Positions 2,659 through 60,429 of a stretch of 64,000 nucleotides of DNA are shown in pieces. Positions within the stretch are counted from its first letter, which is position 1, and each line of letters starts with the position of its first letter. A program made the position numbers and the translations under genes. Source of the DNA: Mytilus californianus. Its lineage: Eukaryota. The notes under the pieces are model-generated. The model was not told where the DNA came from, searched no databases, and saw only the letters and a list, made by a program, of their open reading frames with translations. The stretch is from positions 14,508,001 through 14,572,000 of the forward strand of contig NW_026262593.1 in NCBI RefSeq assembly GCF_021869535.1, in the 5' to 3' direction.

Positions 2659-2691
<33 letters not shown>

Positions 2692-19300: not shown

Positions 19301-19321
19301 TTTTATTTACTCAATTATATA

Positions 19322-37271: not shown

Positions 37272-37378
37272 ATTAAGGATCCAAAAGTCCAATAGGTTTT
37301 AAAATGTCCTGTACCAAGTCAGCAATTAGGGATCCAAAAGTCCAAAAGGTCATAAAATTTCCTGTACCAAGTCAGGAA
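37272..37378. repeat. Tandem duplication of about 53 bp
   Basis: AATTA.GGATCCAAAAGTCCAA.AGGT...CCTGTACCAAGTCAG occurs twice. Confidence 0.75.
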
Positions 37379-39625: not shown

Positions 39626-39829
39626 CCTAAAACCAAACTTGAATTTAAAGGATTTAAGAAAAACAAAAGCTGATCAAATCTCTTGAAATATTTTTAAATT
39701 AAAAAAAAAGCCAACAACATAAAATGTCAATTTAATTGACAAAAAAGTCATTTTGAACAAGTTTTTAGTATTTGTTTTAAAAAGATTTAAGGTAAATTTT
39801 GGCCAACTAGCTTAATACGTATATGAGGA

Positions 39830-40098
39830 ATCTGATGTTCAGTAGTTGTCGTTTGTTGATGTGGTTCATAAGTGTTTCTCGTTTCTCGTTTTTTATATAG
39901 ATTAGACCGTTGGTTTTCCCGTTTGAATGGTTTTACACTAGTAATTTTTTGAGGCCCTTTATAGCTTAATGTTCGGTGTGAGCCAAGGCTCCGTGTTGAA
40001 GACCGTACTGTGACCTATAATGATTTACTTTTATAAATTTTGACTTGGATGGAGAGTTGTCTCATTGGCACTCATACAACATCTTCTTATATCTATAG
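39830..40098 (-). repeat. Interspersed repeat family A copy (subtype of 6654 and 58303)
   Basis: GTTTCTCGTTTCTCG...GGATGGAGAGTTGTCTCATTGGCACTCATAC.ACATCTTCTTATATCT. Confidence 0.88.
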
Positions 40099-40765
40099 GT
40101 ACTTGTACACCATTGGCTTTCGTAATGTGGCTTTGAACATTCCTGATTAAAGGTAGATCAAGAAAAGTACTTTGGACGCACCAATTTGTTTTTGAAGAAT
40201 TTCTATTTGACTTATTCAACCTCTTGATTCAGAGATTTTGTTGGTACACACATGTATATGATATAAGATTTCACTGAAACTAAATTAAAACAACGTTAAA
40301 TCAATTTACAGAAACTTTTGTATATACTTTAATCCATATTCAAAATTAAGATTGAACTGGGACACTTTGCTGGATACCAGTAATTTTTAATCGACAAATG
40401 CATCCGCACTTTATATACTGAGTAAATAATGTTTAGCAACACAAATTTTTGATTCTATGTTTGAATAACAAAATTTACTTTTTAAAATAATAATTGATAA
40501 ATATTGTAACAACGAAAATAAACCATAAGGTATAATATTCATTCAACATAATATATTTATTTCCTCAACTTTAGATTCAATTTAAAATCTAATAGATGTT
40601 GCTAAACTTTTTTACCCAGACGTATATTTGTGCGGTAATGAAGCATTACATTATCAAATACATTGTATTCGTTGAACTTAACATGTAATCAACTTTTATA
40701 AAAAGATCATGGTTTGCAGTCTAAAGTAAAGTTTTAAACCGAAAAGTAACCGAGCACTTTCGGTA

Positions 40766-43700
40766 TTATACTAGAAACACATCAGTCATTATGTTGGATC
40801 TATTTCCGAATAACGATTTTGGAAAAGGATCATATCCAAATAATTTGAAGTCATTATGATACACATTCTGCAACTTGTACATTAAAGTAAGAGGAATAGT
40901 GTTATACGCTTGTATAAAAAGTTTCCGTCTTTGTACTGAAAGATTGTCCTTTTTGGATATTTGGTGTGTGGTCGAAATAATAGTTAGTAATTTTGATAAC
41001 AATATGTGTTGCGATTCTTTCTTATTTAAGGGGATAGATTTATTCTCAGAAATTATCCCCCTATACTGTAGCTTCCTCCAAATTCGTTGCAAACCAGTAT
41101 ACGGATTCATGCATTTTTTAGACTCGTGTCGAAAAGCAATAAAAGCTTGAACTGTATCATAAATGGCATCATATTTATACTCATCGCTAAAATTTTGTGT
41201 AATGTAAGGGCTTGAGTTTATTTGAAATTTAGCAAAAATATTGACTGTATCATTTAGAAAATTTTCCATTTTGCCAATATAATGATAATTGACTTGACAT
41301 GGTCTACAGATGGAATGGATGGGTATAAAATGATCGTCTAATTTTTCTATTGGGGTTTGAATGATGTATTCCACAAGGTCTCTGAAAGTAACAGCACTAC
41401 CACACGAGGGGTTTTTACCAACTGTTTTCATAATTATGACACCTAGTGTTTTCCAAAAATACGGATTAGGTGAATATAATTTATCAATGTACGCTGACAA
41501 AATTCGTGAATAAGGATTTCTAGTGAACATGAAACTTCTGGTTTCTGTTAATATGTTATACGTTCCATTCAAACTATGCTTTGCACACGAAACACGATAT
41601 TTGCTCTGTTCATCCTGTGGTTTTATACGAAATGGGGATAATTTAATGTTTCTTTGTAAATAGGCGAGAAGGCGCTTCCAAAATGTTGATCCTCCCTTAT
41701 AAACTCTACAATAAGCAAGTTGCTTGCTGAATAGAGGCATTATACTGTTCTTAAAAACGGCATCCATTTTAGTTTCATTAAGACTTTCTGCATCGCAAAG
41801 ATCTTTTGGGAAATGGTAACCATCTTTCCAAGACCTCTTTGTAATATCTGTCTAAAAAGAAAATGAAAATAGTCTTTGATCGTTTTCTTTCAATCGATTT
41901 ATGACTTTTGAACAGCAGTATACCACTGTTGCCTTTATTTGAGAGCGTTGTCGAATACTAGTATAATATTATTACCAAATTGAATATTATAATGACTAGA
42001 AGGACTATTTTGCCATACAAATATTTTTTTTATATAAAAAACCTTATTTTGCTTTTTGTTTTCCCCGTTTTGAGTAATAAGCATGTTTCGGAATCTATCA
42101 TACAGTGTGGTGAAATATATACTTATCAGTCAATCAAGCATTTCATTATCATATAAATGTATTACAATGTGAAGTTAGCAGTATCCTTTAACTTTTTTTT
42201 TTACTTTCCGCTATATAGATGATGTTCTTTCACTAAATAATTCAAAATTTGGTGACTATGTTGAACGCATCTATCCCATTGAACTTAAGATAAAGGATAC
42301 AACAGATACAGTTAAGTCTGCCTCATATCTTGACTTACATCTAGAAATTGACAATGAGGGTCGGTTGAAATAAAAACTTTACAACAAAATAGATGATTTC
42401 AGCTTCCCAATTGTGAACTTTCCATTTCTATGTAGCAACATTCCAGTAGCGCCTGCATACGGAGTATATATCTCCCCGTTGATACGATATTCCAGGGCTT
42501 GTATTTCCTATCATGATTTCCTCGATAGAGGGTTGCTGCTCACAAGGAAGCTATTACACCAAGAGTTCCAAGTGGTGAAGTTGAAATCATCCCTTCGTAA
42601 GTTTTACGGACACCATCACGAGTTGGTTGACCGTTATGGTATATCCGTTTCACGAATGATAGCGGATATGTTCCTAATGTCGTCACTACGATCCCGCTCC
42701 GTTCCCTCTTTCCGAATGTGACCTACCGAATTAGACTTATTACCGGGTTTGTACTAACATAAGTAACACGACGAGTGCCACATGTGAAGCAGGATCTGCT
42801 TACCCTTCGGGAGCACCTGATATCTCCACCAGTTTTTGGAGTGGTTCGTGTTGCTCAGTCTTTAGTTGTCTATGCTTTGTTTTGTGTACTATTGTTTATT
42901 TGTCGGTCTTTTTCTTTTTTAGCCATGACGTTGTCAGTTTATTTTCGCCTTATGAGTTTGAATGTCCCTCTGGTATCTTTCGCCTCTCTTTTATCGTAGG
43001 ACATGTAGAAAAAACCGTCCGTTCGGAAAAAAATCTTAACTTAAGTAGTTTTAAGCATATCAGCCGTGACTAACTGGGTGGGGGTGCATTAATTGTCAAT
43101 ATATATATTTTAATTCATACTTCATTAGTGCTCATTCAATCAAAATCAGACGATTACAGCAAATTTACTATGTTCAGTTATGTGCTCCTCACCTCTGTTG
43201 TATGATGTTGATAATTCAATACGAGATAGGAGTCGTGTTTGGTGAATTTAGAATGATTGTGATACCACGTTAAATACTCCTTCACACCTTGTTCACCTAA
43301 AAAAGATTAAAAAACATATGTTATAGGCCAAGTTAAGAAAGCAAATTGTGTGACAAGTGGTAAAGTTCTTTGAAAATTTGAATTTTCCATTAAATTAGAA
43401 CAATGCATATTTTAAGAAACAATGCAAAAAATGTTTTTATTTTAATATTCTACTGTATGCAAATTGCCGTTTTCATGCTGAACTGATACCTGGCAAACAA
43501 ATTTAAATTTCATCACGATACCATAAAGTAGTAAATGAGTCTGAGATATGAATCAAGTGTTCGTTTTACTTGAAATAAAAGCCCCTTATTAGCATAACCC
43601 TGCCTCTGCCTATTATGTCAAATTCTATTGCTGTTACGGGCAAATGTTCTCTCGATTTACAAAATTACGAGTGTAGCAATCTCGACTTACACCAATAAAT

Positions 43701-46616
43701 CGGTATAAATAATTGATGTAAACTATTTTGAATGTTAGTAGATTCAGTTTGCGATTTACATTTCAACCTCTTAACAGTGCACATCAATGTTAGTTACCGC
43801 CTACGAAGAGAACAAATTCAATCCTATAACGTTGTAATCCACGTTTATTGAAAAATCCCTTTCAACTTTCAAATTAGTGTAAAATTGAAAAACATCATGC
43901 ATATTTCATGCTGTTTTGTCGCAGTACATTGTCTGTTGTGCAGTTGGAAAACCCTGATGTATCAATCCTGGACTGCCGTTGTGTTGAGTGAACCAGCAGT
44001 ATTTTGCCTGTCCCTTGCAGATTAAGATTTATGGGACCACTGCGAAAGTAGCGAGATTGTGTTCCATTTGACATTATATTGTCGTGCAATTGCACCCTCG
44101 GACTCTAAGACTTAAGGACGTTTAAGAGCGATATTCCGTGCAGCTATTGAAACTTAAAAAGAGAGGAGATACAAAGAGTGCAATACAAATCCACCAAAAC
44201 AGACAATACCTAGGCAAAAAACCCCGAGGAAACGAATGTTAACAATATAGAAGCATTATACAGAAAAGTAAAGAGTTAGCAATACGAAACTCACCTATAA
44301 CCGGCGAAAACGCGGGTGCTGTGGAGGGGTAAGCAGTTCCTTGTCCTCTGGTGGTTTCCGCAGTTTTACTCATAGCAAGTTAAAATGTCGCATTCGTTTC
44401 ACATTGCATGTGAAGTTACCGTCACAGGGAGTACTAATTACCAAGAAAAAGCAAAGGATGCAAAAATGTATGCAACGTTTATGATTTAACGTGGATTACA
44501 ACGTTATAGGATTGAATTTGCTCTCTTCGTAGGCGGTAACTAACATTGATGTGCACTGTTAAGAGGTTGAAATGTAAATCGCAAACTGAATCTACTAACA
44601 TTCAAAAGAGTTTACATCAATTATTTATACCGATTTATTGGTGTAAGTCGAGATTGCTACACTCGTAATTTTATAAATCGAGTGAAGCGGTTTTGTCAAG
44701 ATCAAGAAACAGAGGACGGAATAGTGGTTAACAAAAGTGAAACATATCCGTGGACATCGATCCATGACCCATATATTCCATAAAGCTCGATGCACATTGC
44801 ATGTGAAGTTACCGTCACCGGGAGTACTAATTACCAAGAAAAAGTAAAGGATGTAAAAATGTATGCAACGTTTATGATTTATTTAGTGGAAATCTAGAAG
44901 AATAAAAAAAAGTATAATAAAAATACCGAACTCAATTTGTGATTTCCAGTTATTCTAAATCTCAAAGTGGAACATTAGCTTATAAACAAACACACTTGTT
45001 CTCTTAATTGCCACAGCTGAAATGTGTCATAATGCATGTAGCAAATTTATCGAGCGGTTTACATAAGAATTTGAAACTTCTGTTCGATGAAATGGAAATC
45101 ACCAGTAGAACTTCATATAAATACATTTTAGTTCATATACTACCTTTAGTGGTATTTTAAGGGGTTTTTTTTTTCAATATTCGTGGACAATGATTTTCCT
45201 TTCCTTATGATTTGTTTTTCTTCTTTTTCTTCTTTTCCTTCTTTTCCTTATTTATCGTTCTTGTTATTTAACTTTAGTTTTCATTTTCAATTTACATTTT
45301 ATCAACCGGAGAGCAAGTCTCATAATGGTATCGATGTTATTATTCTGGTCATGTGATTTTTTTCAACTAGAAAATTGACATTTTCAGCAACGGCAATGAC
45401 GCCACGAAATCGAAGGCGTAAAGACATTTTATATATTTACCATGCTCGACCAAATATATCATTTGATACGGCAGGTTTGAATCTTCACTACGTTATTCGT
45501 TTAAGGCTGAACATGTAAAATGTCCTTGATAATTTGATTGGCAAAGATAAAAAAGTGCCGCGGCAGTCACACAAGCAAAAACATATATTCTATGGTTTAT
45601 TTATGACATGTGTGTGCCCTCTGTCGGTAGAAAAACGCTTCGGAGGCATCTAATATACCAAAACAGTTAGTATTTTTTATACGTATATTTTCAAATAAAA
45701 ATGCAGCGAGTTACTTCTACACTTCAAATAGAGATGTATCTGTTGAAACTTTTTTTCCCAAACGTTCGGTAATATAATGTCTGATAAGTGGAAATTCCTA
45801 ATATTTTCCCATATAAAAGGTCTCAGCATTAACAAACCACGTAATGATTATCAACAATGAAGAAAACATTTTATAATGATTAAGATTATAACACAATGTT
45901 GACTGCTGTACCACAATTTTTTACCATTTCAACCGATTATGTCTGTTTGGTTTGCTCACACATTGTTGTCAATACAATTGAATTTTATGCGACTGTCATA
46001 CAAGTGAGAGGTTTAGCTAGCTATAAAACTAGATTTAATCCACCATTTTCTACATAAGGAAATGCCTGTATCAAGAGAGTAATATGACAGTTGTTTTCCA
46101 ATCGTTCAAATGTTTTTGAGCGTTTGATTTTGCCATTTGACAAGGGACTTTCCGTTTTGAATTTTCCTTGGAGTACAGTATTTTTGATATTTTACTTTTT
46201 AACAATATCATGCGTCCGAAGCTCATTTCTAAATTTACCTTTATCAGTAACACTTAAACTCAAAGTTTTGAAATGTCTGGATGTATGAATAACTGAAAAC
46301 ATGAGAAACTATAATACCATTAGGCACCACAATAGCCAAATTCATATAAGGTCAACTTACCCGAGGGAGTTGAAAGGTTGAATCAACTAAGAAATAAACA
46401 TACCCTACAACTTAATAAAAACTAGCAAGGAATTCATGTGTAAAAATGACGGTTACAATTTTGATTGGTATATACATCAATGAATTCTTTTCTTTGATAT
46501 AAGGATATGTTAAACAAATATAATTTACCTCGAAACATTAGTAGTATATTCAATGTTGTTAAAATACCACACCAGACTAAAAGCATTAAAAACACACGGA
46601 AAAAGTTTCGAGCCAT
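40766..46616 (-). CDS. Golgi type II carbohydrate sulfotransferase (HNK-1ST/CHST8-14-like, Sulfotransfer_2 family), about 425 aa, 3 coding exons
   Basis: Exons (minus) 46616-46529 (MARNFFRVFLMLLVWCGILTTLNILLMFR signal anchor; acceptor at 46650; an in-frame ATG also at 46634), 43296-43193 (stem) and 41851-40766 (catalytic). Phases 1 and 0 are consistent. PAPS-binding motifs CRVYKGGSTFWKR (5'-PSB) and RNPYSRILSAYIDK (3'-PB), plus DDHFIP and YHYIGKME. Exact orthology not determined. Confidence 0.9.
42200..42995 (+). mobile_element. Penelope-like reverse transcriptase 3' fragment with non-coding tail, decayed, in a sulfotransferase intron (antisense)
   Basis: FTFRYIDDVLSLNN...ASYLDLHLEID...LYNKIDDFSFPIVNFPFLCSNIP..PAYGVYIS.LIRYSRAC contains the RT YIDD motif. 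In-frame TAA at 42371. The Penelope-like assignment is from recalled family motifs. Confidence 0.8.
43651..44881. repeat. Complex local rearrangement: 195-bp inverted duplication plus 88-bp direct duplication
   Basis: 43651-43845 is the reverse complement of 44488-44682. 44400-44488 is repeated at 44794-44881. Confidence 0.92.
45880..46235 (-). repeat. Interspersed repeat family C copy
   Basis: Reverse complement of 60430-60735. Confidence 0.8.
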
Positions 46617-47504
46617 CAATCCATTTACAATCATATTGCTTTTTAAAATCTGAAATGCAAAAACATATTTTAAAGTTATCAAATTAAAAAAAAAGAAATT
46701 GGACTAGAGAGGTGAGATATTTTGAAAGACAAACCTATACATTTGCGAGTAAATTATCAATGTAAAAAACAAAACTAATAAAACTTTGACTGATTTCGTC
46801 TGATAATAAATCAAAGATACCAGGATTAAAATTTTGTACGCCAGACGCGCGATTTGTCTACTAAAGACTCATCAGTGACGTTCGAATGCAAAAAGTTAAA
46901 TAGGCTAAAATAAAGATCAAAGGTATAGAGTATTGAATAAGACATCGTTATATTCTCGGTGAAAAAATATGTTAGTAAACTGATTGACACGATATATCCT
47001 AGAACACTTGGAGACCCTTTTGTCATTTCACAATGATCAAATTCATAACTGTATATGGTTATTAGACTGAAATCTATCATATTATATCGTAATAACTATC
47101 CATCAAACATTAAACATCATTTTGATTAAAGATCATGCATTCATTTGTCAGAATACTTGAAACAATGAATAGATTACTAGGAATTTTTGTAACTAGTATA
47201 TATCATTTGATTTATACTTTCCAAGCAAGTTATTATGCATTAAATAACAGTCTCTAGGTATTCTCTTTACTTTTGATTATCAATAACGAACCAAACAATT
47301 TTTCCCTTTGTAACAAATATATTCTCAAGAATTTAAACAATAATACACCCTTGACTCTCACCTTTTTTCGGTTTGAAAGCTACTGATACATGTTAGTCCA
47401 GAAAACTCGTCGAACGCAAAAATATTGATAAGTATTAATTACTTATAGCAACATAATAGAGGAGTCAACTGAAACGTCTGCTTATTATTTTCCAGTGCTT
47501 TGTT

Positions 47505-48030
47505 TTCTGTATAGATATGTGCTGTAAACAAACCAAAACTAATAAATCAACGGTTTTCATGAGTTGTGCTGATTGAAGGGAGCGACAATTGTCGAAACTG
47601 CTTACCATGATAGGAGAACCATTACTACGTTCAACGTCTCTCAGATAGTTTGTTTGACTTAATTACATCGCCAAACTGACAAAGTAAAGAGAAGATCGAA
47701 GTCAGTAAAGAGAACTATTGAAGTTAGTAATGAGAACTGAGCTATAAATATATAAGTTTTTTAAATAATCGTGATGAGTTATTTTAATTGTAATGACCCA
47801 AATACAAAGGTGGGTGTATATCCTTCAGCGTGACAAATCTATGTTGTTTGTTTGAAACCAAACAAGTTAACCTAATAACTACATATGAAAATAATTTTAA
47901 TAGTTACATATATAGATCAGTAGTCCTTTTTGACATGGGATCTTTTTAAGTGCAACTAACATGAGCAATGCATTTTGTAGCTGATCCACATTCCCGATAA
48001 TAGAATTTGTTTGGTGTTTCAAGAAAAAAT
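47505..48030. repeat. Diverged local segmental duplication, copy 1; carries a candidate 5' UTR exon at 47606-47675 on minus
   Basis: Aligns by eye with 49569-50080. Acceptor TTTACTTTGTCAG and donor TG|GTAAGC on minus. Confidence 0.75.
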
Positions 48031-48364
48031 ATCTCAACATGCTTAAATAATTCATGAACTTTTTCCTTGATTCTTGAATTCTGTAAAAAAAAAAAAAACC
48101 ACCAGTTTGGTTAATTATATGTATGTCTTAATAATTAAACTAATACAAACGTATTTAGAATATATCTTTATGATTTGTCATTGAAATTACACATTTTATG
48201 GGTGTTATGTTTTTACCAATCTTTTAATATAACTCAAACTTGTGTCAATCCTCTGGAAAAGACCAGTGGCAATAAGAAAGACATAAGAACTATCCTTTTT
48301 AGAAAGTCTTCTTTTTAGAAAGTGTCGAATGTTCAAAAACACTTTTTACGGAAAACAAATGTAA

Positions 48365-48940
48365 AAATAAAAAAGAAGATGTGGTATGATTGCCAATGAG
48401 ACAACTCTCCACAAGAGACCAAATGACACAGAAATTAACAACTATAGGTCACCGTACGGCCTTCAACAAAGCCCATACCGCACAGTCAGCTATAAAAGGC
48501 CCCGAAATGACAATGTAAAACAATTCAAACGAGAAAAGTAACGGCCTTATTTATGTACAAAAAATGAACGAAAAACAAATATGTAACATATAAACAAACG
48601 ACAACCACTGAATTACAGGCTCCTGACTTGGGACAGGCACATACATACATAATGGGGCGGGGTTAAACATGTTAGCGGGATCCCAACCCTCCCCCTTACC
48701 TGGGACAGTGGTGTAACAGTACAACATAAGAACGAACTATAAAAATCAGTTGAAAGAGGCTTAACTCATCAGATGGATAAAAATACAAATACTACAAATA
48801 CAAGTGGGCGTGGCCGGGTACTTGTACACCCAAACAACAAAAAGACACTAAGTACAGATCTGAGAGTACTCGCAATTACTGACAGCTAGTTCTAAGCCAC
48901 TAACAACTAATAAAAAAAATCATGCATCTAAGACTAAATA
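48365..48940 (+). repeat. Interspersed repeat family A, near full-length copy
   Basis: AAGAAGATGTGGTATGATTGCCAATGAGACAACTCTCC...CCTGACTTGGGACAGGCAC...ATGCATCTAAGACTAAA. Confidence 0.9.
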
Positions 48941-49568
48941 TAAAAGTCAATCCTCTGAAGATGACCAGTAGCGATTAGAAAGCTATGTGAGTAAAACAAT
49001 TTTGTAAACTTTTGCTCTCGATGGGTGTTTAGATAAAAGAATGCTTTTACATTAAAAAACATCTCTTAACTTTTAAAGTCTTGTTTTCATACAGACAAAA
49101 CCTGTGCATCAATCTCGTGTCTGAATATATAGTTATAAAAGGATTGAAAGGATTACTTTGTTCTGACGAATAATAAAGATATATCAAATGAATAAAATGT
49201 CCCAAACAAAAGCAAGAACCGGTTGATCCTTTGAAAATAATTGATAAAAAAGAAAAAAAAAATCTAAAATACTGGACAATACACTAGACCATATCAATCA
49301 CAAAAACCAGCTTCTCCGAAATCTAACTACCATACAAACAAGGAATAACAACATCAAGCATGTATATTAATGGTGATGAACATTATTTATAAACATGCAG
49401 ATATGTGACGTATCATTCAAATTTATGAATATACTTCGGCAGCATTTGATATTAATTGACTTATGTGTGTATGCATTTGTAGTGATTCTTAAGTATCTCT
49501 ACGACTGTATTTCTATGATTATGAAACTTACACTATAATAGATCATTAGATGAGCATATAAGAAACCC

Positions 49569-50080
49569 TCCTGTATAGATATTTGCTGTAAAAACAAAAC
49601 TGATAATAGTTTACATGAGTTCTGCTGATTAAAATGGAGTGACAAATGGTCTAATCAAAATGTTTTTTGATTTCTCTGAAAATCTAAATGTCTAAACTGC
49701 TTACCAGGATAGGATAGCCATTAATACGCTCAACTTTCTCTCAGATAGATTGCTTTCCTTAATTATCACGCCAAACTGAGATAGTAAAGAAAACTGACCT
49801 ATAAATATATATACTTTTTAAACTAATCGTGGTTTGTAATTTTAATTATAATGACCCTAATACAAATAAGAGTGTATAACAATAATTATATGTCTTTTAG
49901 CGTGACTGATTGCAATCTATGTTGTTTGTTTGAAATAAAACAAATCAACCTAGTATTTGCGTATATATATCAGTAACCTTTATTTTCAAATGGGACATTT
50001 CTAAGTGCAATGAACATTAAAAATGTATTTTATAGTTGATTCAAATTTCTGATAATATAATTTTGTTCGGTGTTCCTAAA
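49569..50080. repeat. Diverged local segmental duplication, copy 2; carries a candidate 5' UTR exon at 49705-49775 on minus
   Basis: Aligns with 47505-48030. Acceptor TTTACTATCTCAG and donor TG|GTAAGC retained. Confidence 0.75.
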
Positions 50081-50775
50081 CAAAACAAAAATAAATTTGA
50101 TTTCCTTAATTATCTCGCCCAACTGACAAACTAAAGAGAACTATTGAAGTCAGTAAAGAGAACTTTCGTGGTAAGCAGTTAAGACATTAAGATTTTCAGA
50201 GAAATCAAAAAACATTTTGTATTAAAACTTTGATCAGCAAAATGTTTTTTTTATAAAAAACCATTGATTTATAGTGCCTTACAAGATTTTGTGAGGTAGA
50301 CGAAATTGACCTTAAAACGATCCTATTGTATTTTGATGTCCAAACATAGGCATATTGGGCGTATTTTGACTGTATTAACTGACTACTTTTATTTAGGATT
50401 AATTGTAATTTTTTGTTGTTAAGATAAACAATAACTTTACCTGGCGTAAAATGTATTTCGGCATTTCTCTTCGAAAAATGACTTGTTTAATGGAATAAAA
50501 CGCCTGATTTGTAAACTTTCTCTTTTTTCTAGCGAATAAGATATTAAAAAATATTTTATCTTCTCTATATGTGGACAATTTTGTTAAAATATAAGAAGTG
50601 GCAATTCTTACCTTTCATACCTTTAGTTTCATTTGATAAAAAATAATACGGACTCGTCCAGTGTCCAGTTTGAAGGTCATTTAAGTTACTGTACACATTC
50701 ATGTAAGTTCTGATTTAATCAATATACATGTATGAAAAAAATAAACAGTTTGAAGGTAAACTACACAATTGTTTC

Positions 50776-53700
50776 ACTAGTGTCAAGCTATCCAGCAATT
50801 CTTTTTATTAAAAGCTGTCCTGCAATTCGTCATCCTGCAATTTCGTTTGGAAAACTACTTGAGCGACAATTTCATTTTTCTTTAAAATCATAGTTTTTGA
50901 CTTTTTTGTTCGAAAACAAGATTTTTATATCCCATTAACAAAATTCTAACTTTAGTTTGCAGATTTCTAACTAATATTTACGGTTTTCTAATTAGTATTT
51001 ACAATAAAAAAAAACCATGATGACAATTCAAACAAAGTATTATCTGTTTGGGTCCAGGATGTGATTCATATTAACGCATGTTAAACCCATATTTGCGATT
51101 TTCAAAACTCATCTTAACGATCGACTAAAAATATAGAATGTTCATGTAAATGAAATTTTTCATGGTATACCGACAATACAACTTCTATTTGAAACTGGAT
51201 CACCCACTTTCCAACCCATTGCCTCGGCAGTTCTGTATGGCTAGGGATTATAGACTCTGCTCTAATGAATAGATAATGGATAGTAATACGGCGGGACGGT
51301 AAAGAATTTCTGGGTTAAGCATTCTTAAAGGCCGGAAACTTCGTCCGCAACACGGGGAAAAAAACCTAATTCGATAAAATACGCATTGGCGACACCCACT
51401 ATCCAACCCATTGTCTCGGTTGTTCTTTATGGCTAGTGATTATAGAGGCTGCCATAATCAATAGCTATTAGATAGTACTACAACGTGAGGGTAAAGAATT
51501 TTCTGGGGTAAGCATTCTTAAAGGCCGAAAATTTCGTCCGTAACACGGAAAAAAGTCAAATTTGATAAAATACGCATTGGGCAATTTCCAACCCATTGCC
51601 TCGGCATTTCTGTATGGCTAGGGGTTAAAGACTCTGCTCTAATGAATAGCTATTGGATAGAACTACAGCGGGAGGGTAAAGAATTTCTGGGTTAAGCATT
51701 CTTAAAGGCCGAAAATTTCGTCCGAAACATGGAAATAAAGCCTAATTCGATAAAGTACGCATTGGCGACACCCACTTTCCAACCCATTGTCTCGGTTGTT
51801 TTTTATGGCTAGGGATTATAGACGCTGCCATAATCAATAGCTATTAGATAGAACTACAACGTGATGGTATAGAATTTCTGGGGAAGGCATTCTTAAAGGC
51901 CGAAAATTTCGTCCGTAACACGGAAATAAAGCCTATTTCGATACAATACGCATTGGGCAATTTCCAACCCATTGCCTCGGCAGTTCTGTATGGCTAGGGG
52001 TTATAGACTCTGCTCTAATGAATAGCTATTGGATAGAACTACAGCGGGAGGGTAAAGAATTTCTGGGTTAAGCATTCTTAAAGGCCGGAAACTTCGTCCG
52101 AAACATGGAAATAAAGCCTTATTCGATAAAGTACGCATTGGAGACACCCACTTTCGTACCCATTGTCTCGGTTGTTTTTTATAGCTAGGGATTATAGACG
52201 CTGCCATAATCAATAGCTATTAGATAGTACTACAACGTGAGGGTAAAGAATTTCTGGGGTAAGCATTCTTAAAGGCCGAAAAAATCGTCCGTAACACGGA
52301 AAAAAGTCAAATTTGATAAAATACGTATTGAGCAATTTCCAACCCATTGCCTCGGCAGTTCTGTATGGCTAGGGGTTATAGACTCTGCTCTAATGAATAG
52401 CTATTGGATAGAACTACAGCGGGAGGGTAAATAATTTCTGGGTTAAGCATTCTTAAAGGCCGAAAATTTCGTCCGAAACATGGAAATAAAGCCTATTTCG
52501 ATAAAGTACGCATTGGCGACACCCATTTTCCAACCTATTTTCTCGGTTGTTCTTTATAATTAGGGATTATAGACGCTGCCCTAATGAATAGCTATTGGAT
52601 AGTATTACAACAAGAGGGTAAATAATTTCTGGGGTAAGCATTCTCAAAGGCCGAAAATTTCGTCCGTAACACAGAAAAAAAAGTCAAATTTGACAAAATA
52701 CGCATTGGGCACTTTCCAAATCATTGCCTCGGTAGTTCTGTATGGCTACGGGGTTATAGACTCTGCTCTAATAAATAGCTATTGGATAGATCTACAGCGA
52801 GAGTGTAAAGAATTTCTGGGGTAAGCATTCTTAAAGGCCGAAAATTTCGTTCGAAACATGGAAATAAAGACTAATTCAATTAAATACGCATTGGCGACAC
52901 CCACTTTCCAACCCATTGTCTCGGTTGTTCTTTATGGCTAGGGATTATAGACGCTGCCCTAATGAATAGCTATTGGATAGTACTACAACTTGAGGGCAAC
53001 AAATTTTTGGGGTAAGCTGTCTAAAAGGCCGAAAATTCGTCCGTAACACAGAAAAAAAAGTCAAATTTGATAAAATACGCATTGGGCAATTTCCAAACCA
53101 TTGCCTCGGCAGTTCTTTATGGCTAGGGATTATAGACGCTGCCCTAATGAATATCTATTGGATAGTACTAAAACGGGAGGGTAAAGAATTTCTTGGATAA
53201 GCATTCTTTAAGGCCGGAAACTTCGTCCGTAACACGGGGAAAAAAGTCAATTTGATAAAATACGCATTGGGGTCACTCACTTTCCCATCCATTGCCTCGG
53301 CAGTTCTGTATGGCTAGGGTTTATAGACTCTGCTCTAATAAATAGCTATTGAATAGTACTTCAACGAGAGGGCAAAGAATTTCTGGAGTAAGCATTCCTA
53401 GAGGCCGAAAATTTCGTCCGAAACATGGAAATAAAACCTAATTCGATAAAATACGCATTGGCGACACCCACTTTCCAACCCATTTTCTCGGTTGTTCTTT
53501 ATGGCTAGTGATTATAGAGGCTGCCATAATCAATAGCTATTAGATAGTACTACAACGTGAGGGTAAAGAATTTCTGGGGTCAGCATTCTTAAAGGACGAA
53601 AATTTCGTCCGTAACACGGAAAAAAGTCAAATTTGATAAAATACACATTGGGCAATTTCCAACCCATTGCCTCGGCAGTTCTGTATGGCTAGGGGTTATA

Positions 53701-56700
53701 GACTCAGCTCTAATGAATAGCTATTGGATAGAACTACAGCGGGAGGGTAAAGAATTTCTGGGTTAAGCATTCTTAAAGGCCGAAAATTTCGTCCGAAACA
53801 TGGAAATAAAGCCTAATTCGATAAAGTACGCATTGGCGACACCCACTTTCCAACCCATTGTCTCGGTTGTTTTTTATGGCTAGGGATTATAGACGCTGCC
53901 ATAATCAATAGCTATTAGATAGTACTACAACGTGATGGTATAGAATTTCTGGGGAAGGCATTCTGAAAGGCCGAAAATTTCGTCCGTAACACGGAAATAA
54001 AGCCTAATTCGATACAATACGCATTGGGCAATTTCCAACCCATTGCCTCGGCAGTTCTGTATGGCTAGGAGTTATAGACTCTGCTCTAATGAATAGCTAT
54101 TGGATAGAACTACAGCGGGAGGGTAAAGAATTTCTGGGTTAAGCATTCTTAAAGGCCGAAAACTTCGTCCGAAACATGGAAATAAAGCCTTATTCGATAA
54201 AGTACGCATTGGAGACACCCACTTTCGTACCCATTGTCTCGGTTGTTTTTTATAGCTAGGGATTATAGACGCTGCCATAATCAATAGCTATTAGATAGTA
54301 CTACAACGTGAGGGTAAAGAATTTCTGGGGTAAGCATTCTTAAAGGCCGAAAATTTCGTCCGTAACACGGAAAAAAGTCAAATTTGATAAAATACGCATT
54401 GAGCAATTTCCAACCCATTGCCTCGGCAGTTCTGTATGGCTAGGGGTTATAGACTCTGCTCTAATGAATAGCTATTGGATAGAACTACAGCGGGAGGGTA
54501 AATAATTTCTGGCTTAAGCATTCTTAAAGGCCGAAAATTTCGTCCGAAATATGAAAATAAAGCCTATTTCGATAAAGTACGCATTGGCGACACCCACTTT
54601 CCAACCTATTGTCTCGGTTGTTCTTTATAATAAGGGATTATAGACGCTGCCCTAATGAATAGCTATTGAATAGTATTACAACGTGAGGGTAAATAATTTC
54701 TGGGGTAAGCATTCTCAAAGGACGAAAATTTCGTCCGTAACACAGAAAAAAAAGTCAAATTTGACAAAATACGCATTGGGCACTTTCCAAATCATTGCCT
54801 CGGTAGTTCTGTATGGCTACGGGGTTATAGACTCTGCTCTAATAAATAGCTATTGGATAGATCTACAGCGAGAGTGTAAAGAATTTCTGGGGTAAGCATT
54901 CTTAAAGGCCGAAAATTTCGTTCGAAACATGGAAATAAAGCCTAATTCAATTAAATACGCATTGGCGACACCCACTTTCCAACCCATTGTCTCGGTTGTT
55001 CTTTATGGCTAGGGATTATAGACGCTGCCCTAATGAATAGCTATTGGATAGTACTACAACGTGAGGGCAACTAATTTTTGGGGTAAGCTGTCAAAAAGGC
55101 CGAAAATTCGTCCGTAACACAGAAAAAAAAGTCAAATTTGATAAAATACGCATTGGGCAATTTCCAAACCATTGCCTCGGCAGTTCTTTATGGCAAGGGA
55201 TTATAGACGCTGCCCTAATGAATATCTATTGGATAGTACTAAAACGGGAGGGTAAAGAATTTCTTGGATAAGCATTCTTAAAGGCCAAAAACTTCGTCCG
55301 TAACACGGGGAAAAAAGTCAAATTTGATAAAATACGCATTGGGGTCACCCACTTTCCGACCCATTGCCTCGGCAGTTCTGTATGGCTAGGAATTATAGAC
55401 TCTGCTCTAATAAATAGCTATTGGATAGTACTACAACGAGAGGGCAAAGAATTTCTGGGGTAAGCATTCCTAGAGGCCGAAAATTTCGTCCGAAACATGG
55501 AAATAAAGCCTAATTCGATAAAATACGCATTGGCGACACCCACTATCCAACCCATTGTCTCGGTTGTTCTTTATGGCTAGGGCTTATAGCCGCTGCCCTA
55601 ATGAATAGCTATTGGATAGTACTACAACGTGAGGGAAATAATCTCTCGGGTAAGCATTCTTAAAGGCCAAAAATTTCGTCCGTAACACGGAAAAAAAGTC
55701 AAATTTGATAAAATACGCATTGGGTAATTTCCAACCCATTGCCTCGGTAGTTCCTTTATGGCTAGGGGTTATAGACTCTGCTCTAATGAATAGCTATTGG
55801 ATAGTACTACAGCGGGAGGGTAAAGAATTTCTGGGGTAAGCATTCTTAAAGGCCGAAAATTTCGCTCGAAACATAGAAATAAAGCCAAATTCGATTAAAT
55901 ACGCGTTGGGGACATCCACTTTCCAACCCATTGTCTCGGTTGTTCATTATGGTTAGGGATTATAGACGCTGCCCTAATGAATAGGTATTGGATAGAACTA
56001 CAATTTGAGAATAAAGAATTTCTGGGGTAAGCATTCTGAAAGGCCGAAAATTTCGTCCGTAACACGGAAAAAAGTCAAATTTGATAAAATACGCATTGGG
56101 CACTTTCCAACCTATTGCCTCGGCAGTTCTGTATGGTTAGGGATTATAGACTCTGCTCTAATAAATAGCTATTGGATAGTACTACAGCGGGAGGGTAAAG
56201 AATTTCTGGGGTAAGCATTCTTAAAGGCCGAACATTTCGCTCGAAACATAGAAATAAAGCCAAATTCGATTAAATACGCGTTGGGGACATCCACTTTCCG
56301 ACCCATTGTCTCGGTTGTTCTTTATGGCTAGGGATTATAGACGCTGCCCTAATGAATAGCTATTGGATAGAACTACAACTTGAGGATAAAGAATTTCTAG
56401 GGTAAGCATTCTGAAAGGCCGAAAATTTCGTCCGTAACACGGAAAAAAGTCAAATTTGATAAAATACGCATTGGGTATTTTCCAACCTATTGCCTTGGCA
56501 GTTCTGTATGGTTAGGGATTATAGACTCTGCTCTAATAAATAGCTAATGGATAGAAATACAGCGGGAGGGTAAAGAATTTCTGGGGTAAGCATTCTTAAA
56601 GGCCGAAAATTTCGCTCGAAACATAGAAATAAAGCCAAATTCGATTAAATACGCGTTGGCGACACCCACTTTCCGACCCATTGTCTTGGTTGTTCTTTAT

Positions 56701-58293
56701 GGCTAGGGATTATAGACGCTGCCCTAATGAATAGCTATTGGATAGTACTACAACGTGAGGGCAACAAATTTTTGGGGTAAGCTGTCTAAAAGGCCGAAAA
56801 TTCGTCCGTAACACAGAAAAAAAAGTCAAATTTGATAAAATACGCATTGGGCAATTTCCAAACCATTGCCTCGGCAGTTCTTTATGGCTAGGGATTATAG
56901 ACGCTGCCCTAATGAATATCTATTGGATAGTACTAAAACGGGAGGGTAAAGAATTTCTTGGATAAGCATTCTTAAAGGCCGAAAACTTCGTCCGTAACAC
57001 GGGGAAAAAAGTCAAATTTGATAAAATACGCATTGGGGTCACCCAATTTCCGACCCATTGCCTCGGCAGTTCTGTATGGCTAGGGATTATAGACTCTGCT
57101 CTAATAAATAGCTATTGGATAGTAATACAACGAGAGGGCAAAGAATTTCTGGGGTAAGCATTCCTAGAGGCCGAAAATTTCGTCCGAAACATGGAAATAA
57201 AGCCTAATTCGATAAAATACGCATTGGCGACACCCACTATCCAACCCATTGTCTCGGTTGTTCTTTATGGCTAGGGATTATAGCCGCTGCCCTAATGAAT
57301 AGCTATTGGATAGTACTACAACGTGAGGGTAAATAATCTCTCGGGTAAGCATTCTTAAAGGCCAAAAATTTCGTCCGTAACACGGAAAAAAAGTCAAATT
57401 TGATAAAATACGCATTGGGTAATTTCCAACCCATTGCCTCGGAAGTCATGTGTGGCTTGGGGTTATAGACTGCACTAATGAATAGCTATTGGATAGTACT
57501 ACAGCGGGAGGGTAAGGAATTTCTGGGGTAAGCATTCTTAAAGGCCGAAAATTTCGCTGGAAACATAGAAATAAAGCCAAATTCGATTAAATACGCGTTG
57601 GGGACATCCACTTTCCGACCCATTGTCTCGGTTGTTCATTATGGCTAGGGATTATAGACGCTGCCCTAATGAATAGCTATTGGATAGTACTACAACTTGA
57701 GGATAAAGAATTTTTAGGGTAAGCATTCTGAAAGGCCGAAAATTTCGTCCGTAACACGGAAAAAAGTCAAATTTGATAAAATACGCATTGGGTATTTTCC
57801 AACCTATTGCCTTGGCAGTTCTGTATGGTTAGGGATTATAGACTCTGCTCTAATAAATAGCTAATGGATAGAACTACAGCGGGAGGGTAAAGAATTTCTG
57901 GGGTAAGCATTCTTAAAGGCCGAAAATTATCTCGAAACATAGAAATAAAGCCAAATTCGATTAAATACGCGTTGGGGACACCCACTTTCCGACCCATTGT
58001 CTCGGTTGTTCTTTATGGCTAGGGATTATAGACGCTGCCCTTAATGAATAGCTATTGGATAGTACTACAACGTGAGGATAAAGAATTTTTGGCCTTTAAA
58101 AAGCCTTACCCCAGAAATTATTTACCCTCACGTTGTAATTTCGAACAAAAAAAGTCAAAAACTATGATTTTAAAGAAAAATAAAATTGTCGCTCAAGTAG
58201 TTTTCCAAACGCAATTGCAGGATGACGAATTGCAGGATAGCTTTTTATAAAGAGAATTGCAGGATGAGAATTGCTGGATAGCTTGACACTAGT
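50776..58293. mobile_element. Non-autonomous Mutator/foldback-like TIR element (7518 bp) carrying a satellite array
   Basis: TIRs at 50776-50915 and 58139-58293 (ACTAGTGTCAAGCTATCCAGCAATTC..., with internal ATCCTGCAATTC subrepeats). Perfect 9-bp TSD AATTGTTTC at 50767-50775 and 58294-58302. No transposase ORF. Confidence 0.92.
51200..58090. repeat. Satellite array of about 36-37 monomers alternating about 184 and 191 bp, with 11-mer and 9-mer higher-order repeats
   Basis: GGCC spacing 193, 184, 191, 185, 191, 184, 191. An identical ORF recurs 2071 bp apart (52001 and 54072). The TACTAAAACGGG marker recurs at +2071 and then +1694. Confidence 0.97.
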
Positions 58294-58302
58294 AATTGTT
58301 TC

Positions 58303-58620
58303 AGGTTAGGGTGAATGTTGGCGCCTATCAAAACGTTTAAACCCGCTGCATTTGTTTGCACCTCTTAAGTCAGGAACAGTTATGATGTGGTTCTTTAGTG
58401 TTTCTCGTTTCTCGTTTTAATAATAGATTAGACCGTTGGTTTTCCAGTTTGAATGGTTTTACACTAGTCATTTTTTAGGCCCTTTATAGCTTCTGTTCGG
58501 TGTGAGCGAAGGCTCTGTGTTGAAGGCCGTACTTTGACCTATAATTGTTTACTTTTACAAATTGTGACTTGGATGGAGAGTTGTCTCATTGGCACTCATA
58601 CCACATCTTCTTATATCTAT
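58303..58620 (-). repeat. Interspersed repeat family A copy, apparently interrupted by the satellite-carrying element
   Basis: Begins AGGTTAGGG directly after the TSD and ends GTCTCATTGGCACTCATACCACATCTTCTTATATCT. Confidence 0.85.
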
Positions 58621-60429
58621 TTACTAATAATAACTTAATCCAATCAAATTGCCTAAGACTCAATAACAATGATCGGTCCACATCAAAATAAGTAATAGGG
58701 GTAAACTGGGTAGGGAGAAAATGACAGATATTTTAAGTTCATTTTTTGTAATAACGAATAAAAATTTGTCAACCAAAAGTTTTGCTATAATTTCAAAAAC
58801 ATGTTCAGTATTGGTATAGTTTTCTGATCTTTCATTTGCGTATTTAAGGTACTAAAAAGTTTTGTCTTCAAAAGTCTACATAGTTATTGATTTTATACAG
58901 ACAAATCGCCCTTTTATAACATTTAATGTTTCACATATAATACATGGATACAAAGTAAAATCATCTTTTAAAACACTGCAAAAAATTTCATTCTGATTGG
59001 TATAGTGGTATTGTCATAAAGTGCGATGACATGAACCGTGGTATAGCAAACATTGAATTCCTTCACAAAATGTTACCACGCATTATAGCAGGTCGGGAAC
59101 TCTACCTTATATGGATATGCATAAATTAGTATACTAATATCCTCACAAATATAACTGTTTATTTACGTAAGACGCATTTTTTACCTGGGTTTTGACCAAT
59201 CCAAAAATAATGATCTTCTGCCATGTATACAAAGGCCGTTGGTTATTTATCACATTTGCAAGAAGCTTTATGTACCTCCCATGTCAAAATTTCATTCTCT
59301 GTACAGCTTATATTTGGTAACATTTGTTATAAACCCCTATCCAAACCAGTTTAAAGTTATAGCTATCATCTCGGATATTGCCAGTCACAGAAATTTCAGA
59401 CCGGTTCCCATCGCTAAAGATGAAAAGGGTAAAATGTCCTTTCTTAAACTTTATTTGCCCACAACAGTATCAATGCAATCAAATTGGGCAATATCCTTCT
59501 TCATAAATCAGTTCACTGGAAAGTTCCGCCTTGCTTTAGACATGGTTTGTCACTCTGTCTTTGACTAATGAGTTTTGATTGTTCTAAAAAAAATTTGTCA
59601 TATTTCGTGTCATGTTTTCAGTGTATCATTCGTATCTACTTATTCTTTATCATCAACATAAATCAATGAATAGAAAGATCGTAAAGGTATTTCTTGATGT
59701 GTTGCTACTTATTTCGTGTAATATGTACTTAATCAATTTTTAAAATGTATAAAGCAAAATTATCTATCAGATCTCCTGGTTCCTCTGATAACTTATACAA
59801 AGTCGAAAACATAGATAGTTGTTTCTTTAATGGTATTTGTTACCAACCAATAGTTCATTGAACTAATACATTTTGAAAAACAAAACATTAATCCAAAGAT
59901 TAAAACGCATTCGAAAACAAACAAGAAAGAGATGATATCGAGGTAGCAATCAAAAATTCGTATACAAACAGACAAAACCATGACCAAAAGAACTCGACAA
60001 AAATAGCAATTTGGACAAAACAGCCATGAAAACTCCTTGATTCAACGATTTTACATAAAATCAACATTGTACAACAAATCTTTTTGCTACAATATATGTA
60101 CAGGAAATAAAGAGAACAGATATTCGTTTAGCTGCAATATAAAATAAAAATACTTTTCCATAACATATGGTGAACATCTTCCACTTCGAGCGACTCCAAA
60201 AGAAATCTTAAACAATGCCTTTGTCATTTGTATAAAGATTTTTTAATTAAATGACACTGGTGTTAATTGAACAAAAACAGTGCAGTTAATCGCAGGCTGT
60301 CTCACATTGATGATTTGCTGTTCCTTGCTTGTTCCGAAACTACAATTATTTGATGTCACATTTAATGACATTGTTTCATTTTCATTGTGAAGTTAAAAAA
60401 TCTACATAAAGTAAAATAACAATAAAAAA

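What the first reader, a model, noticed from the sequence alone, without database searches (positions are those of the whole stretch)
50767..58302. A 6.9-kb satellite array carried as cargo inside an intact Mutator-like transposon
Seen: the whole array lies between 140-155-bp TIRs bounded by a perfect 9-bp TSD (AATTGTTTC). Joining the flanks gives TACACAATTGTTTCAGGTTAGGG, which resembles the family A motif TACACCACTGTCCCAGGTTA seen at about 23157, so the empty site looks reconstructable. There is no transposase. Known: long TIRs with a 9-bp TSD characterise MULE/foldback elements; bivalve satellites are mostly reported inside Helitron/Helentron or short MITE structures. Inference: a non-autonomous cut-and-paste vehicle that seeds kilobase satellite blocks into gene-rich DNA, here about 1 kb upstream of the candidate sulfotransferase leader exons. 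Whether the array expanded before or after insertion is unknown.
Basis: partly seen in the sequence, partly recalled or inferred. Interest (0 to 1): 0.85.

Follow-up and report, generated by a model that had tools for sequence, protein, structure and literature searches.

The report
Satellite-carrying TIR transposon in mussel
A 7.5-kb jumping-gene shell with no enzyme of its own, filled with about 36 copies of a 190-bp repeat, landed upstream of a sulfotransferase gene in the California mussel after that species split from its sister species. It is a clean, datable example of a known way of spreading satellite DNA, not a new kind of element.

Summary
A perfect 9-bp duplication (AATTGTTTC) flanks 137/152-nt inverted ends: 5 mismatches, 2 indels, and 3 and 4 copies of a 12-nt subterminal motif found nowhere else in the window. 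Between the ends lie a 288-bp non-repeated segment and a 6.9-kb array of 36.6 monomers of about 190 bp.

New here:
- The window is Mytilus californianus. The orthologous locus of M. coruscus is contiguous across the site and lacks both the element and the SINE-like repeat it sits in. No element part occurs in the loci fetched from M. galloprovincialis, M. edulis or M. trossulus.
- The array has A/B dimers plus two block duplications (11-monomer, 2.1% diverged; 9-monomer offset, about 1.3%). At least 8 monomer lineages differ by more than 10%. The array was therefore probably already kilobase-sized at insertion and roughly doubled afterwards.
- Contig depths in three species labels show the ends, the 288-bp segment and the monomer are all repeated families. 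The monomer is 10-200 times more abundant than the ends.

"Mutator-like" rests only on the 9-bp duplication, the long ends and exclusion of Merlin; no transposase was found. Genome-wide co-occurrence of ends and monomer could not be tested.

The scan noted similar transposon-plus-satellite composites elsewhere in this genome, with other satellites. Verdict: new member of a known kind.

The parts
50767..50775 (.). Left copy of the 9-bp target-site duplication AATTGTTTC
   Evidence: It corresponds to a single 9-mer (CACTGTCCC) in three paralogous copies of the target repeat.
50776..50912 (+). Left terminal inverted repeat (137 nt), tip ACTAGTGTCAAGC. It holds three subterminal 12-nt motifs (ATCCWGCAATTC type) at 50790, 50817 and 50832.
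   Evidence: Positions 50809 and 50843 differ from the family consensus seen in contigs, and that consensus equals the right arm.
50913..51200 (+). 288-bp AT-rich internal segment, not repeated in the window. It is a repeated family sequence genome-wide, with depth falling from the TIR inwards.
   Evidence: It shows no similarity to the monomer beyond shuffled controls.
51201..58092 (+). Satellite array: 36 full monomers and 1 partial monomer of about 184-192 bp, all in one orientation. A/B dimers have a 375-bp period. GC is 40% against 34% for the window.
51393..55536 (+). An 11-monomer block (51393-53464) and its tandem duplicate (53465-55536): 43 mismatches in 2071 positions (2.1%).
54969..58092 (+). 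Second block duplication at a 9-monomer offset (54969-about 56398 duplicated as 56663-58092). Its first four monomers are 1.3% diverged.
58084..58140 (-). 57-nt inverted monomer fragment abutting the inner end of the right TIR. With the truncated last monomer it forms a hairpin of about 27 bp (58066-58137).
   Evidence: 82-91% complementary to many monomers. (DNA fold -18.3 kcal/mol, z -6.6).
58142..58293 (-). Right terminal inverted repeat (152 nt) with four subterminal motifs at 58279, 58265, 58238 and 58223. It has one motif more than the left arm, which accounts for the 14-nt indel.
   Evidence: TRF also reports a 14-bp period at 58213-58279.
58294..58302 (.). Right copy of the 9-bp target-site duplication AATTGTTTC
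58303..58650 (+). Body of the SINE-like 'family A' repeat that was the target. Its first bases are 50761-50775, left of the element. This repeat is itself absent from the M. coruscus ortholog.

Best explanation
This is one copy of a non-autonomous cut-and-paste DNA transposon family of Mytilus. The ends of 137-152 nt carry 3-4 copies of a 12-nt subterminal motif, the likely binding sites for a transposase supplied in trans. That enzyme made a 9-bp staggered cut in the head of a SINE-like repeat, 4.1 kb upstream of the CHST12-like coding sequence. The insertion happened in the M. californianus lineage after its split from M. coruscus.

The superfamily is most likely Mutator-like, at about 60%, and this is inferred rather than shown. 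The interior has no coding capacity. It is a 288-bp remnant of the family's internal sequence plus a passenger array of a 190-bp satellite that is abundant across the genus.

The array was probably already multi-monomeric at insertion (at least 8 monomers, about 1.5 kb or more). It then roughly doubled in place through an 11-monomer and a 9-monomer-offset block duplication, by unequal exchange or replication slippage. The inverted monomer fragment and hairpin at the right inner junction suggest how the satellite was first acquired: template switching during gap repair in an ancestral copy. That step is inference.

Shown: the insertion, the TSD, the TIRs, the order of nesting, absence in the sister species, the array architecture, and repetition of all parts in other genomes. 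Inferred: the superfamily, mobilisation in trans, array size at insertion and the capture mechanism.
For: TSD and TIRs. The subterminal motif occurs 7 times in 64 kb, all in the two arms.

Paralogous empty site: the joined flanks are collinear with three other copies of the target repeat, with one 9-mer where this locus has two.

Orthologous empty site: the window equals M. californianus GCA_021869535.1 (L001, 100% over 18.6 kb). In M. coruscus L002 the left flank and the DNA right of the SINE are about 45 bp apart, with neither SINE nor element. No TIR, 288-bp segment or monomer occurs in 92 kb of L002-L005.

Timing: noncoding divergence between M. californianus and M. coruscus is JC 0.055-0.125. 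The TIR arms differ by 0.037 +/- 0.016 and the block duplicates by 0.013-0.021. There are 8 monomer lineages at a 10% cut, and the edge monomer's best match is 89%.

Family status: summed contig depth relative to the single-copy flank is roughly 100-350x for the TIR, 25-100x for the 288-bp segment and 800-7000x for the monomer in organism A. The picture is similar in organisms B and C. The left-arm differences from the right arm at 50809 and 50843 are private to this copy.

No coding capacity or RNA family.

Literature: 9-bp TSDs point to Mutator or Merlin, and Merlin TIRs end in 5'-GG (PMC8101967). MULEs are present in all molluscs and Merlin is rare in bivalves (PMC10294476). Tetris was assigned to Mutator on the same kind of evidence (PMC4079207).
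Against: No transposase, autonomous relative or second copy of the element could be examined. Superfamily and mobility in trans therefore rest on TSD length and TIR architecture alone.

The tool warns that summed contig depth is not a copy number. No contig bridging TIR to monomer was shown. One 154-nt contig of organism C overlaps the junction between the 288-bp segment and the array by only 24 nt, below the tool's 31-nt rule.

The timing argument assumes that the arms were identical at insertion, that rates are equal in the arms and the array, and that there was no ectopic conversion from other arrays. The arm estimate (3.7 +/- 1.6%) is not significantly different from the block duplicates (2.1 +/- 0.3%).

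The monomer is 10-200 times more abundant than the TIR, so many arrays may be TIR-free.
Confidence: 0.7

Rival explanations
1. The architecture and history are the same, but the element belongs to another superfamily that makes 8-9-bp duplications (Merlin), or to an undescribed one, not to Mutator-like elements.
For: The TSD length alone is shared by Merlin (8-9 bp; PMC8101967). Merlin families with internal tandem repeats are reported in the same paper. No transposase was found here.
Against: Merlin TIRs carry a conserved terminal 5'-GG, whereas this tip is 5'-AC. Merlin is rare in bivalves and MULEs are ubiquitous there (PMC10294476). TIRs of 137-152 nt with subterminal repeats are typical of MULEs (general knowledge).
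Confidence: 0.2
2. One-off acquisition. A short TIR element of this family inserted here, and only afterwards did this particular copy take up the satellite, by ectopic recombination or break repair from a TIR-free array. On this reading the family does not ferry the monomer.
For: The monomer is unrelated in sequence to the TIR and the 288-bp segment. It is 10-200 times more abundant than the TIR. The right inner junction is a repair-like hairpin with an inverted monomer piece directly on the TIR. No other copy could be inspected.
Against: Eight monomer lineages more than 10% apart, and A/B at about 20%, sit inside an insertion younger than the M. californianus-M. coruscus split (K about 0.08-0.12). 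A post-insertion uptake would therefore have had to import an already complex array of at least 1.5 kb in one event. The 288-bp segment stays repeated at about 25x single-copy depth right up to the array boundary. One contig of organism C overlaps that boundary, which is weak evidence.
Confidence: 0.15
3. A miniature element with only one to three monomers transposed, and essentially the whole 6.9-kb array grew in place. Kilobase satellite blocks are then not what is mobilised.
For: The model cited for Xenopus TR-MITEs and oyster HINEs predicts that long arrays hinder mobility. Arrays in mobile copies are mostly 5 monomers or fewer (PMC7492417, PMC12628747). About half of this array is demonstrably recent block duplication.
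Against: Monomer lineages are diverged well beyond the TIR-arm divergence and beyond the species divergence. Generating them in place would require a much higher substitution rate in the array than in the arms and flanks.
Confidence: 0.15
4. Assembly artefact: a satellite block wrongly joined between two inverted copies of a short repeat.
For: The array could not be checked with spanning reads. The Logan contigs are only 140-260 nt long in this region.
Against: There is a perfect 9-bp duplication exactly at the TIR tips. A single copy of that 9-mer is present in paralogues. The orthologous empty site is clean, and the HOR structure is orderly.
Confidence: 0.02

Closest known systems
Tetris, a foldback-type non-autonomous transposon of Drosophila virilis (PMC4079207)
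   Same: It is non-coding and TIR-bounded with 8-10-bp TSDs. It was assigned to the Mutator superfamily from TSD size only. It carries tandem repeats of about 220 bp that also exist as satellite arrays.
   Different: In Tetris the tandem repeats are part of the long inverted arms, giving a foldback architecture. Here a single-orientation central array lies between short (137-152 nt) TIRs, and only a 57-nt monomer piece is inverted.
Tandem-repeat-containing MITEs of Xenopus (miDNA4, Xstir), as summarised in PMC12628747
   Same: They have TIRs and a TSD, no ORF, and an internal satellite monomer present in variable number. They are proposed to seed satellite arrays, and expansion occurs by replication or repair errors.
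   Different: They belong to Tc1/mariner with a TA duplication and mostly short arrays. Here the duplication is 9 bp and the array has 36.6 monomers (6.9 kb) with higher-order structure. Copy-number variation among copies was not testable.
Helentron-associated interspersed elements of bivalves (Cg_HINE, pearl/CvA/CvE, MgE of Mytilus, DTC84) (PMC7492417, PMC3879986, PMC11136912)
   Same: The host group is the same. They have a central array of 140-190-bp satellite-like monomers in a fixed orientation between conserved end segments, dispersed in gene-bearing DNA.
   Different: They are rolling-circle elements with subterminal (not terminal) inverted repeats, a 3' palindrome and microsatellite, and no TSD. 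Their arrays are mostly 5 monomers or fewer, with a maximum of 29. Here the TIRs are terminal and the TSD is a perfect 9 bp.
Merlin elements with internal tandem repeats (PMC8101967)
   Same: They have 8-9-bp TSDs, TIRs up to hundreds of bp, and some families carry internal tandem repeats of about 160 bp.
   Different: The conserved terminal 5'-GG is absent here, and Merlin is rare in bivalves (PMC10294476).

Membership tests
Mutator-like elements (MULE/MuDR superfamily) | Target-site duplication of about 9 bp (8-11) | tested here: met
   A perfect 9-bp AATTGTTTC lies on both sides. A single 9-mer is present in paralogues.
Mutator-like elements (MULE/MuDR superfamily) | Long TIRs (about 100 bp or more), often with subterminal repeats | tested here: met
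   The arms are 137 and 152 nt with 5 mismatches. They hold 3 and 4 copies of a 12-nt motif.
Mutator-like elements (MULE/MuDR superfamily) | MuDR-type DDE transposase in the element, or termini shared with an autonomous MULE | not testable with these tools
   No ORF longer than 70 aa lies in the element. No TE protein is present elsewhere in the window. The genome could not be searched, and collection scans for the TIR tip returned 0.
Merlin superfamily | 8-9-bp TSD | tested here: met
   The TSD is 9 bp.
Merlin superfamily | TIRs with a conserved terminal 5'-GG (PMC8101967) | tested here: not met
   Both tips read 5'-ACTAGTG.
Foldback elements (FB, Tetris type) | Very long inverted arms built of tandem subrepeats that make up most of the element | tested here: not met
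   All 36.6 monomers are in one orientation. Inverted homology is limited to 137-152 nt plus one 57-nt fragment.
Helentron-associated interspersed elements (HINE: pearl, MgE, Cg_HINE) | No TSD, subterminal inverted repeats, a 3' palindrome and a microsatellite | tested here: not met
   There is a perfect 9-bp TSD and the inverted repeats are terminal. No conserved right-hand box lies between the array and the TIR.
Helentron-associated interspersed elements (HINE: pearl, MgE, Cg_HINE) | Central array of satellite-like monomers of about 140-190 bp in a fixed orientation | tested here: met
Tandem-repeat-containing non-autonomous TIR transposons (TR-MITE type) | TIRs, a TSD, no coding capacity and an internal tandem repeat | tested here: met
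   At 7.5 kb it is not 'miniature'.
Tandem-repeat-containing non-autonomous TIR transposons (TR-MITE type) | Multiple copies at different loci that share the ends and differ in repeat number | tested here: inconclusive
   The ends and the 288-bp segment are repeated (25-350x the single-copy depth) in three species labels. No second copy could be read.
Satellite DNA | Head-to-tail monomers, high genomic abundance, higher-order repeats | tested here: met
   There are 36.6 copies with dimer, 9-monomer and 11-monomer periodicities. Monomer depth is roughly 10^3-10^4 times the single-copy depth in three species labels (this is a rough figure, since the tool cautions that depth is not a copy number).

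The most novel reading that the evidence does not exclude
In Mytilus, a cut-and-paste (probably Mutator-like) non-autonomous family, rather than Helentrons, may be a main vehicle for a genus-wide 190-bp satellite. On this reading it moves kilobase-sized arrays as cargo and was still active after the M. californianus-M. coruscus split, so that dispersed satellite blocks near genes are dated transposition events.
Probability: 0.2. Interest if true: 0.65.

Novelty: new member of a known kind. Interest (0 to 1): 0.45.

Why it matters
Satellite DNA in bivalves is described as being scattered mainly by rolling-circle Helentron derivatives carrying short arrays. This locus shows that a classical TIR/TSD transposon can also hold a long array (36 monomers, 6.9 kb) with higher-order structure. 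Unusually, the event can be ordered and dated. The insertion is nested in a SINE-like repeat, absent in the sister species, bracketed by the TIR-arm divergence, and followed by block duplications. That makes it a usable test case for two questions. One is whether long arrays are moved or grow in place. The other is whether such insertions affect nearby genes, here a carbohydrate sulfotransferase 4.1 kb away. On its own it is a single, well-documented example of a known phenomenon.

Tried and rejected
Attempts to fetch other copies:
- ORFs that bridge the monomer-to-TIR junction (58044-58247) or lie in the monomer (52004-52213) had no homologue in the protein collection.
- Exact-pattern scans for the TIR tip and a monomer core in metagenome, genome and viral collections all returned 0.
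- Look-ups of earlier scan notes by sequence were blank.
- A literature search for sequence strings was blank.

Other negative results:
- The single read-laying run covered only the left junction, because of the 6-kb limit and the repeat. It showed no contig bridging TIR to array and gave no information on empty alleles within M. californianus.
- RNA reads were few (49), all but one under 95% alike and on both strands, so nothing can be said about transcription of this copy.
- A ribozyme or tRNA origin of the monomer is rejected.
- Derivation of the monomer from the TIR, the 288-bp segment or the flanks is rejected.
- The idea that each arm is itself a small MITE is rejected, because the arm contains no internal inverted 8-mers.
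- A nested Helentron-type insert is rejected, because there is no right-hand conserved box and the only sequence between the array and the TIR is the inverted monomer fragment.
- An exact look-up of the 333-aa ORF and of P0002 found nothing. The annotated isoforms and cluster members did work.
- No sulfotransferase PAPS-binding motif was found in a six-frame scan of the window with a strict pattern. The proposed leader exons near the element stay unverified.
Full report
**Anatomy**

Reading the two ends shows AATTGTTTC at 50767-50775 and again at 58294-58302. Directly inside these lie inverted ends that start ACTAGTGTCAAGC. A pairwise alignment gives a left arm of 137 nt (50776-50912) and a right arm of 152 nt (58142-58293). 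They share 132 matches and differ by 5 mismatches, one 14-nt indel and one 1-nt indel. BLAST of one arm against the window finds only the other arm (E about 1e-50), and neither the arms nor the monomer occur anywhere else in the 64 kb. At local base composition, nine identical flanking bases are expected by chance with a probability of about 1.4e-5.

Each arm holds copies of a 12-nt motif of the type ATCCWGCAATTC, three on the left and four on the right. The extra copy on the right accounts for the 14-nt indel. The 10-nt core CC[AT]GCAATT occurs seven times in the whole window, all in the arms and in mirror orientation. This is the usual look of subterminal transposase-binding sites, which is inference from general knowledge of TIR transposons.

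**Interior**

After the left arm come 288 bp of AT-rich sequence (50913-51200) that is unique in the window. The array follows at 51201-58092. TRF reports a 191-bp period with 36.6 copies at 81% matches, and a 375-bp period with 18.3 copies at 89%.

I cut the array into 37 units and compared them. Mean identity by distance between units was:

| Distance between units | Mean identity |
|---|---|
| Neighbours | 79% |
| Two apart | 89% |
| Nine apart | 91% |
| Eleven apart | 92.5% (up to 99.5%) |

The array is therefore built of A/B dimers plus two large block duplications:
- Units 2-12 (51393-53464) are repeated as units 13-23 (53465-55536), with 43 differences in 2071 positions (2.1%).
- A block starting at unit 21 (54969) is repeated from unit 30 (56663). 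Its first four units differ by 1.3%.

Removing both duplications leaves about 17-18 units. The first unit, next to the 288-bp segment, is the most diverged, with a best match of 89%. This is the edge effect expected of an array that has been turned over in its middle.

The last unit is cut at about position 113 and joined to a 57-nt monomer fragment in inverted orientation (58084-58140) that touches the inner end of the right arm. Together they fold into a 27-bp hairpin (-18.3 kcal/mol, z -6.6).

The monomer shows no similarity to the arms, the 288-bp segment or the flanks beyond shuffled controls. It matches no Rfam family at E up to 1 and contains no tRNA. The longest ORF in the element is 70 aa, lies in the monomers and has no Pfam family. 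The element has no transposase.

**Is it an insertion? Paralogous evidence**

Joining the flanks with one copy of the 9-mer gives a sequence that aligns, without a gap at the junction, with the head of a SINE-like repeat of about 340 bp. Copies at 23157, 48577 (reverse complement) and 25372 carry GTTACAC-CACTGTCCC-AGGTAAGGGG, where this locus has ACTACAC-AATTGTTTC-AGGTTAGGG. On the right side the similarity runs on for more than 300 bp. On the left side only 14 nt are available (9 matches, chance about 0.007 by my own binomial estimate). This test is therefore supportive but not conclusive on its own.

**Orthologous evidence**

The ORF at 40766-41767 on the minus strand is a Sulfotransfer_2 domain protein (E 2e-34). 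Its annotated product is 'carbohydrate sulfotransferase 12-like' of Mytilus californianus (100% identity). The locus fetched with that protein, L001 from GCA_021869535.1, equals window 38000-56634 at 100%. This identifies the genome, places the CDS at 40766-46634 (minus strand), and puts the element 4.1 kb upstream of the CDS start.

Cluster members gave the orthologous loci of M. coruscus (L002), M. galloprovincialis (L003), M. edulis (L004) and M. trossulus (L005). L002 is collinear with the window from the gene up to window position 50733. Only about 45 bp further on, it continues with the sequence that in M. californianus lies to the right of the SINE (window about 58650 onwards). M. coruscus therefore lacks both the SINE copy and the 7.5-kb element at this site.

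None of the four foreign loci (92 kb) contains the arms, the 288-bp segment or the monomer. In the three more distant species the site itself could not be aligned reliably. The order of events is: an older repeat (50270-50763, continuing at about 58650), then the SINE, then the TIR element. The last two events are specific to the M. californianus lineage.

**Timing**

| Comparison | Divergence |
|---|---|
| M. californianus vs M. coruscus, noncoding DNA at this locus | JC 0.055-0.125 |
| The two TIR arms | 0.037 +/- 0.016 |
| Block duplicates in the array | 0.013-0.021 |

In contigs of other genomes the family consensus at 50809 and 50843 equals the right arm, so those left-arm differences are private, later mutations. 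This supports using arm divergence as a clock and fits a post-split insertion.

The block duplicates are as young as, or younger than, the arms. The difference from the arms is not statistically significant. In contrast, A and B units differ by about 20%. A 10% cut leaves 8 monomer lineages and a 6% cut leaves 14.

Assuming equal rates and no ectopic conversion, the array already had at least 8 units (about 1.5 kb or more) when the element inserted, and it roughly doubled afterwards.

**Family status**

One read-laying run covered 50100-51600 with contigs of three species labels (A, B, C) and RNA reads of A. Summed contig depths were:

| Part | Organism A | Organism C |
|---|---|---|
| Single-copy flank | 8-15 | about 49 |
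| TIR arms | 1200-3900 | 18,000-38,000 |
| 288-bp segment (falling inwards) | about 1100 down to 275 | 9800 down to 1400 |
| Monomer | 9000-75,000 | 65,000-735,000 |

The tool warns that these sums are not copy numbers, so I use them only for order of magnitude. All three parts are repeated families shared across species labels. The 288-bp segment belongs to the family, and its inward decline fits heterogeneous deletion derivatives. The monomer outnumbers the arms by 10-200 times.

With 36 units per two arms in this copy, a ratio near 15 (organisms A and C) would fit arrays living mostly in such elements. A ratio near 100 (organism B) would not. The data cannot decide between these. No bridging contig from TIR to monomer was listed. 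One 154-nt contig of organism C overlaps the junction between the 288-bp segment and the array by 24 nt, below the tool's 31-nt criterion. The RNA run laid only 49 reads, all but one under 95% alike and on both strands.

**Classification**

A 9-bp duplication restricts the choice to Mutator-like elements or Merlin. This rests on general knowledge, and PMC8101967 lists 8-9 bp for Merlin. Merlin ends carry a conserved 5'-GG (PMC8101967), whereas these start 5'-AC. MULEs occur in all molluscs examined, while Merlin is rare in bivalves (PMC10294476). Tetris of Drosophila virilis was placed in Mutator on the same kind of evidence (PMC4079207). I therefore call the element probably Mutator-like (about 0.6) and stress that no transposase supports this.

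It is not a foldback element, because the array has one orientation. It is not a Helentron derivative like pearl, MgE, DTC84 or Cg_HINE, because it has terminal repeats and a TSD (PMC7492417, PMC3879986). Tandem-repeat-bearing non-autonomous TIR elements that seed satellites are a described phenomenon (miDNA4, Xstir, Tetris; review PMC12628747). Oyster carriers mostly hold 5 units or fewer, with 29 the longest (PMC7492417), so this array is at the long end.

Earlier notes of this scan list other TIR-plus-satellite composites and Mutator elements in the same genome. Apart from the species identity, I did not test those notes. None matched this TIR or monomer by sequence.

**Mechanism proposed**

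A transposase supplied in trans binds the subterminal motifs, excises the element at the arm tips and integrates it with a 9-bp stagger. The satellite is a passenger.

The satellite was probably taken up in an ancestral copy by template switching during repair of an excision gap. This would explain why the right arm is followed at once by an inverted monomer piece and a snap-back junction, while the left arm keeps 288 bp of family sequence. This step is inference only.

After insertion, unequal exchange or slippage duplicated blocks of 11 and about 8-9 units.

**What could not be done**

No other copy of the element could be fetched. So do the identity of the autonomous partner and presence/absence polymorphism within M. 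californianus.

**Verdict**

This is a new member of a known kind and of moderate interest.

Noticed in passing
window 50270-50763 and about 58650-59000: These are the two halves of one high-copy repeat, at thousands of times the single-copy depth in three species labels. They are split by the SINE and the element. Loose ends of RNA reads at 50763 continue with the sequence found at about 58660. In M. coruscus the two halves are contiguous.
   Followed up: partly
window 23157-23499 (+), 48361-48577 (-), 25372-25526 (+), 39857-40096 (+), 6649-6812 (-), 19087-19319 (+), 58303-58650 (+): There are at least seven copies or fragments of a SINE-like repeat of about 340 bp ('family A'). Its 3' end reads ...GTCTCATTGGCACTCATACCACATCTTC. 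The copy at 58303 is 5'-truncated and absent from the M. coruscus ortholog, so the family was active after the species split.
   Followed up: partly
window 43647-43845 and 44488-44686: These are 199-nt inverted arms, 98% alike and about 640 bp apart, inside the intron of the sulfotransferase gene. They look like a MITE-like element of about 1 kb. One arm is also present in M. coruscus (91%).
   Followed up: no
window 38693-39161 and 39157-39625: A direct tandem duplication of 469 bp at 99.8% identity lies just downstream of the sulfotransferase coding exon.
   Followed up: no
window 30502-32331 (-): This 609-aa ORF has B-box zinc-finger and NHL-repeat matches (TRIM-like). It is annotated as a 586-residue gene next to the sulfotransferase in M. 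californianus, M. galloprovincialis and M. trossulus.
   Followed up: no
window 58066-58137: A 27-bp hairpin (z -6.6) is formed by the truncated last monomer and an inverted monomer fragment at the inner edge of the right TIR. It may be a scar of the event that brought the satellite into the element.
   Followed up: partly
L004 1-5887: In M. edulis the 10 kb upstream of the orthologous gene holds a 1229-residue reverse-transcriptase/endonuclease gene (LINE-like). It is not seen at the corresponding place in the window.
   Followed up: no
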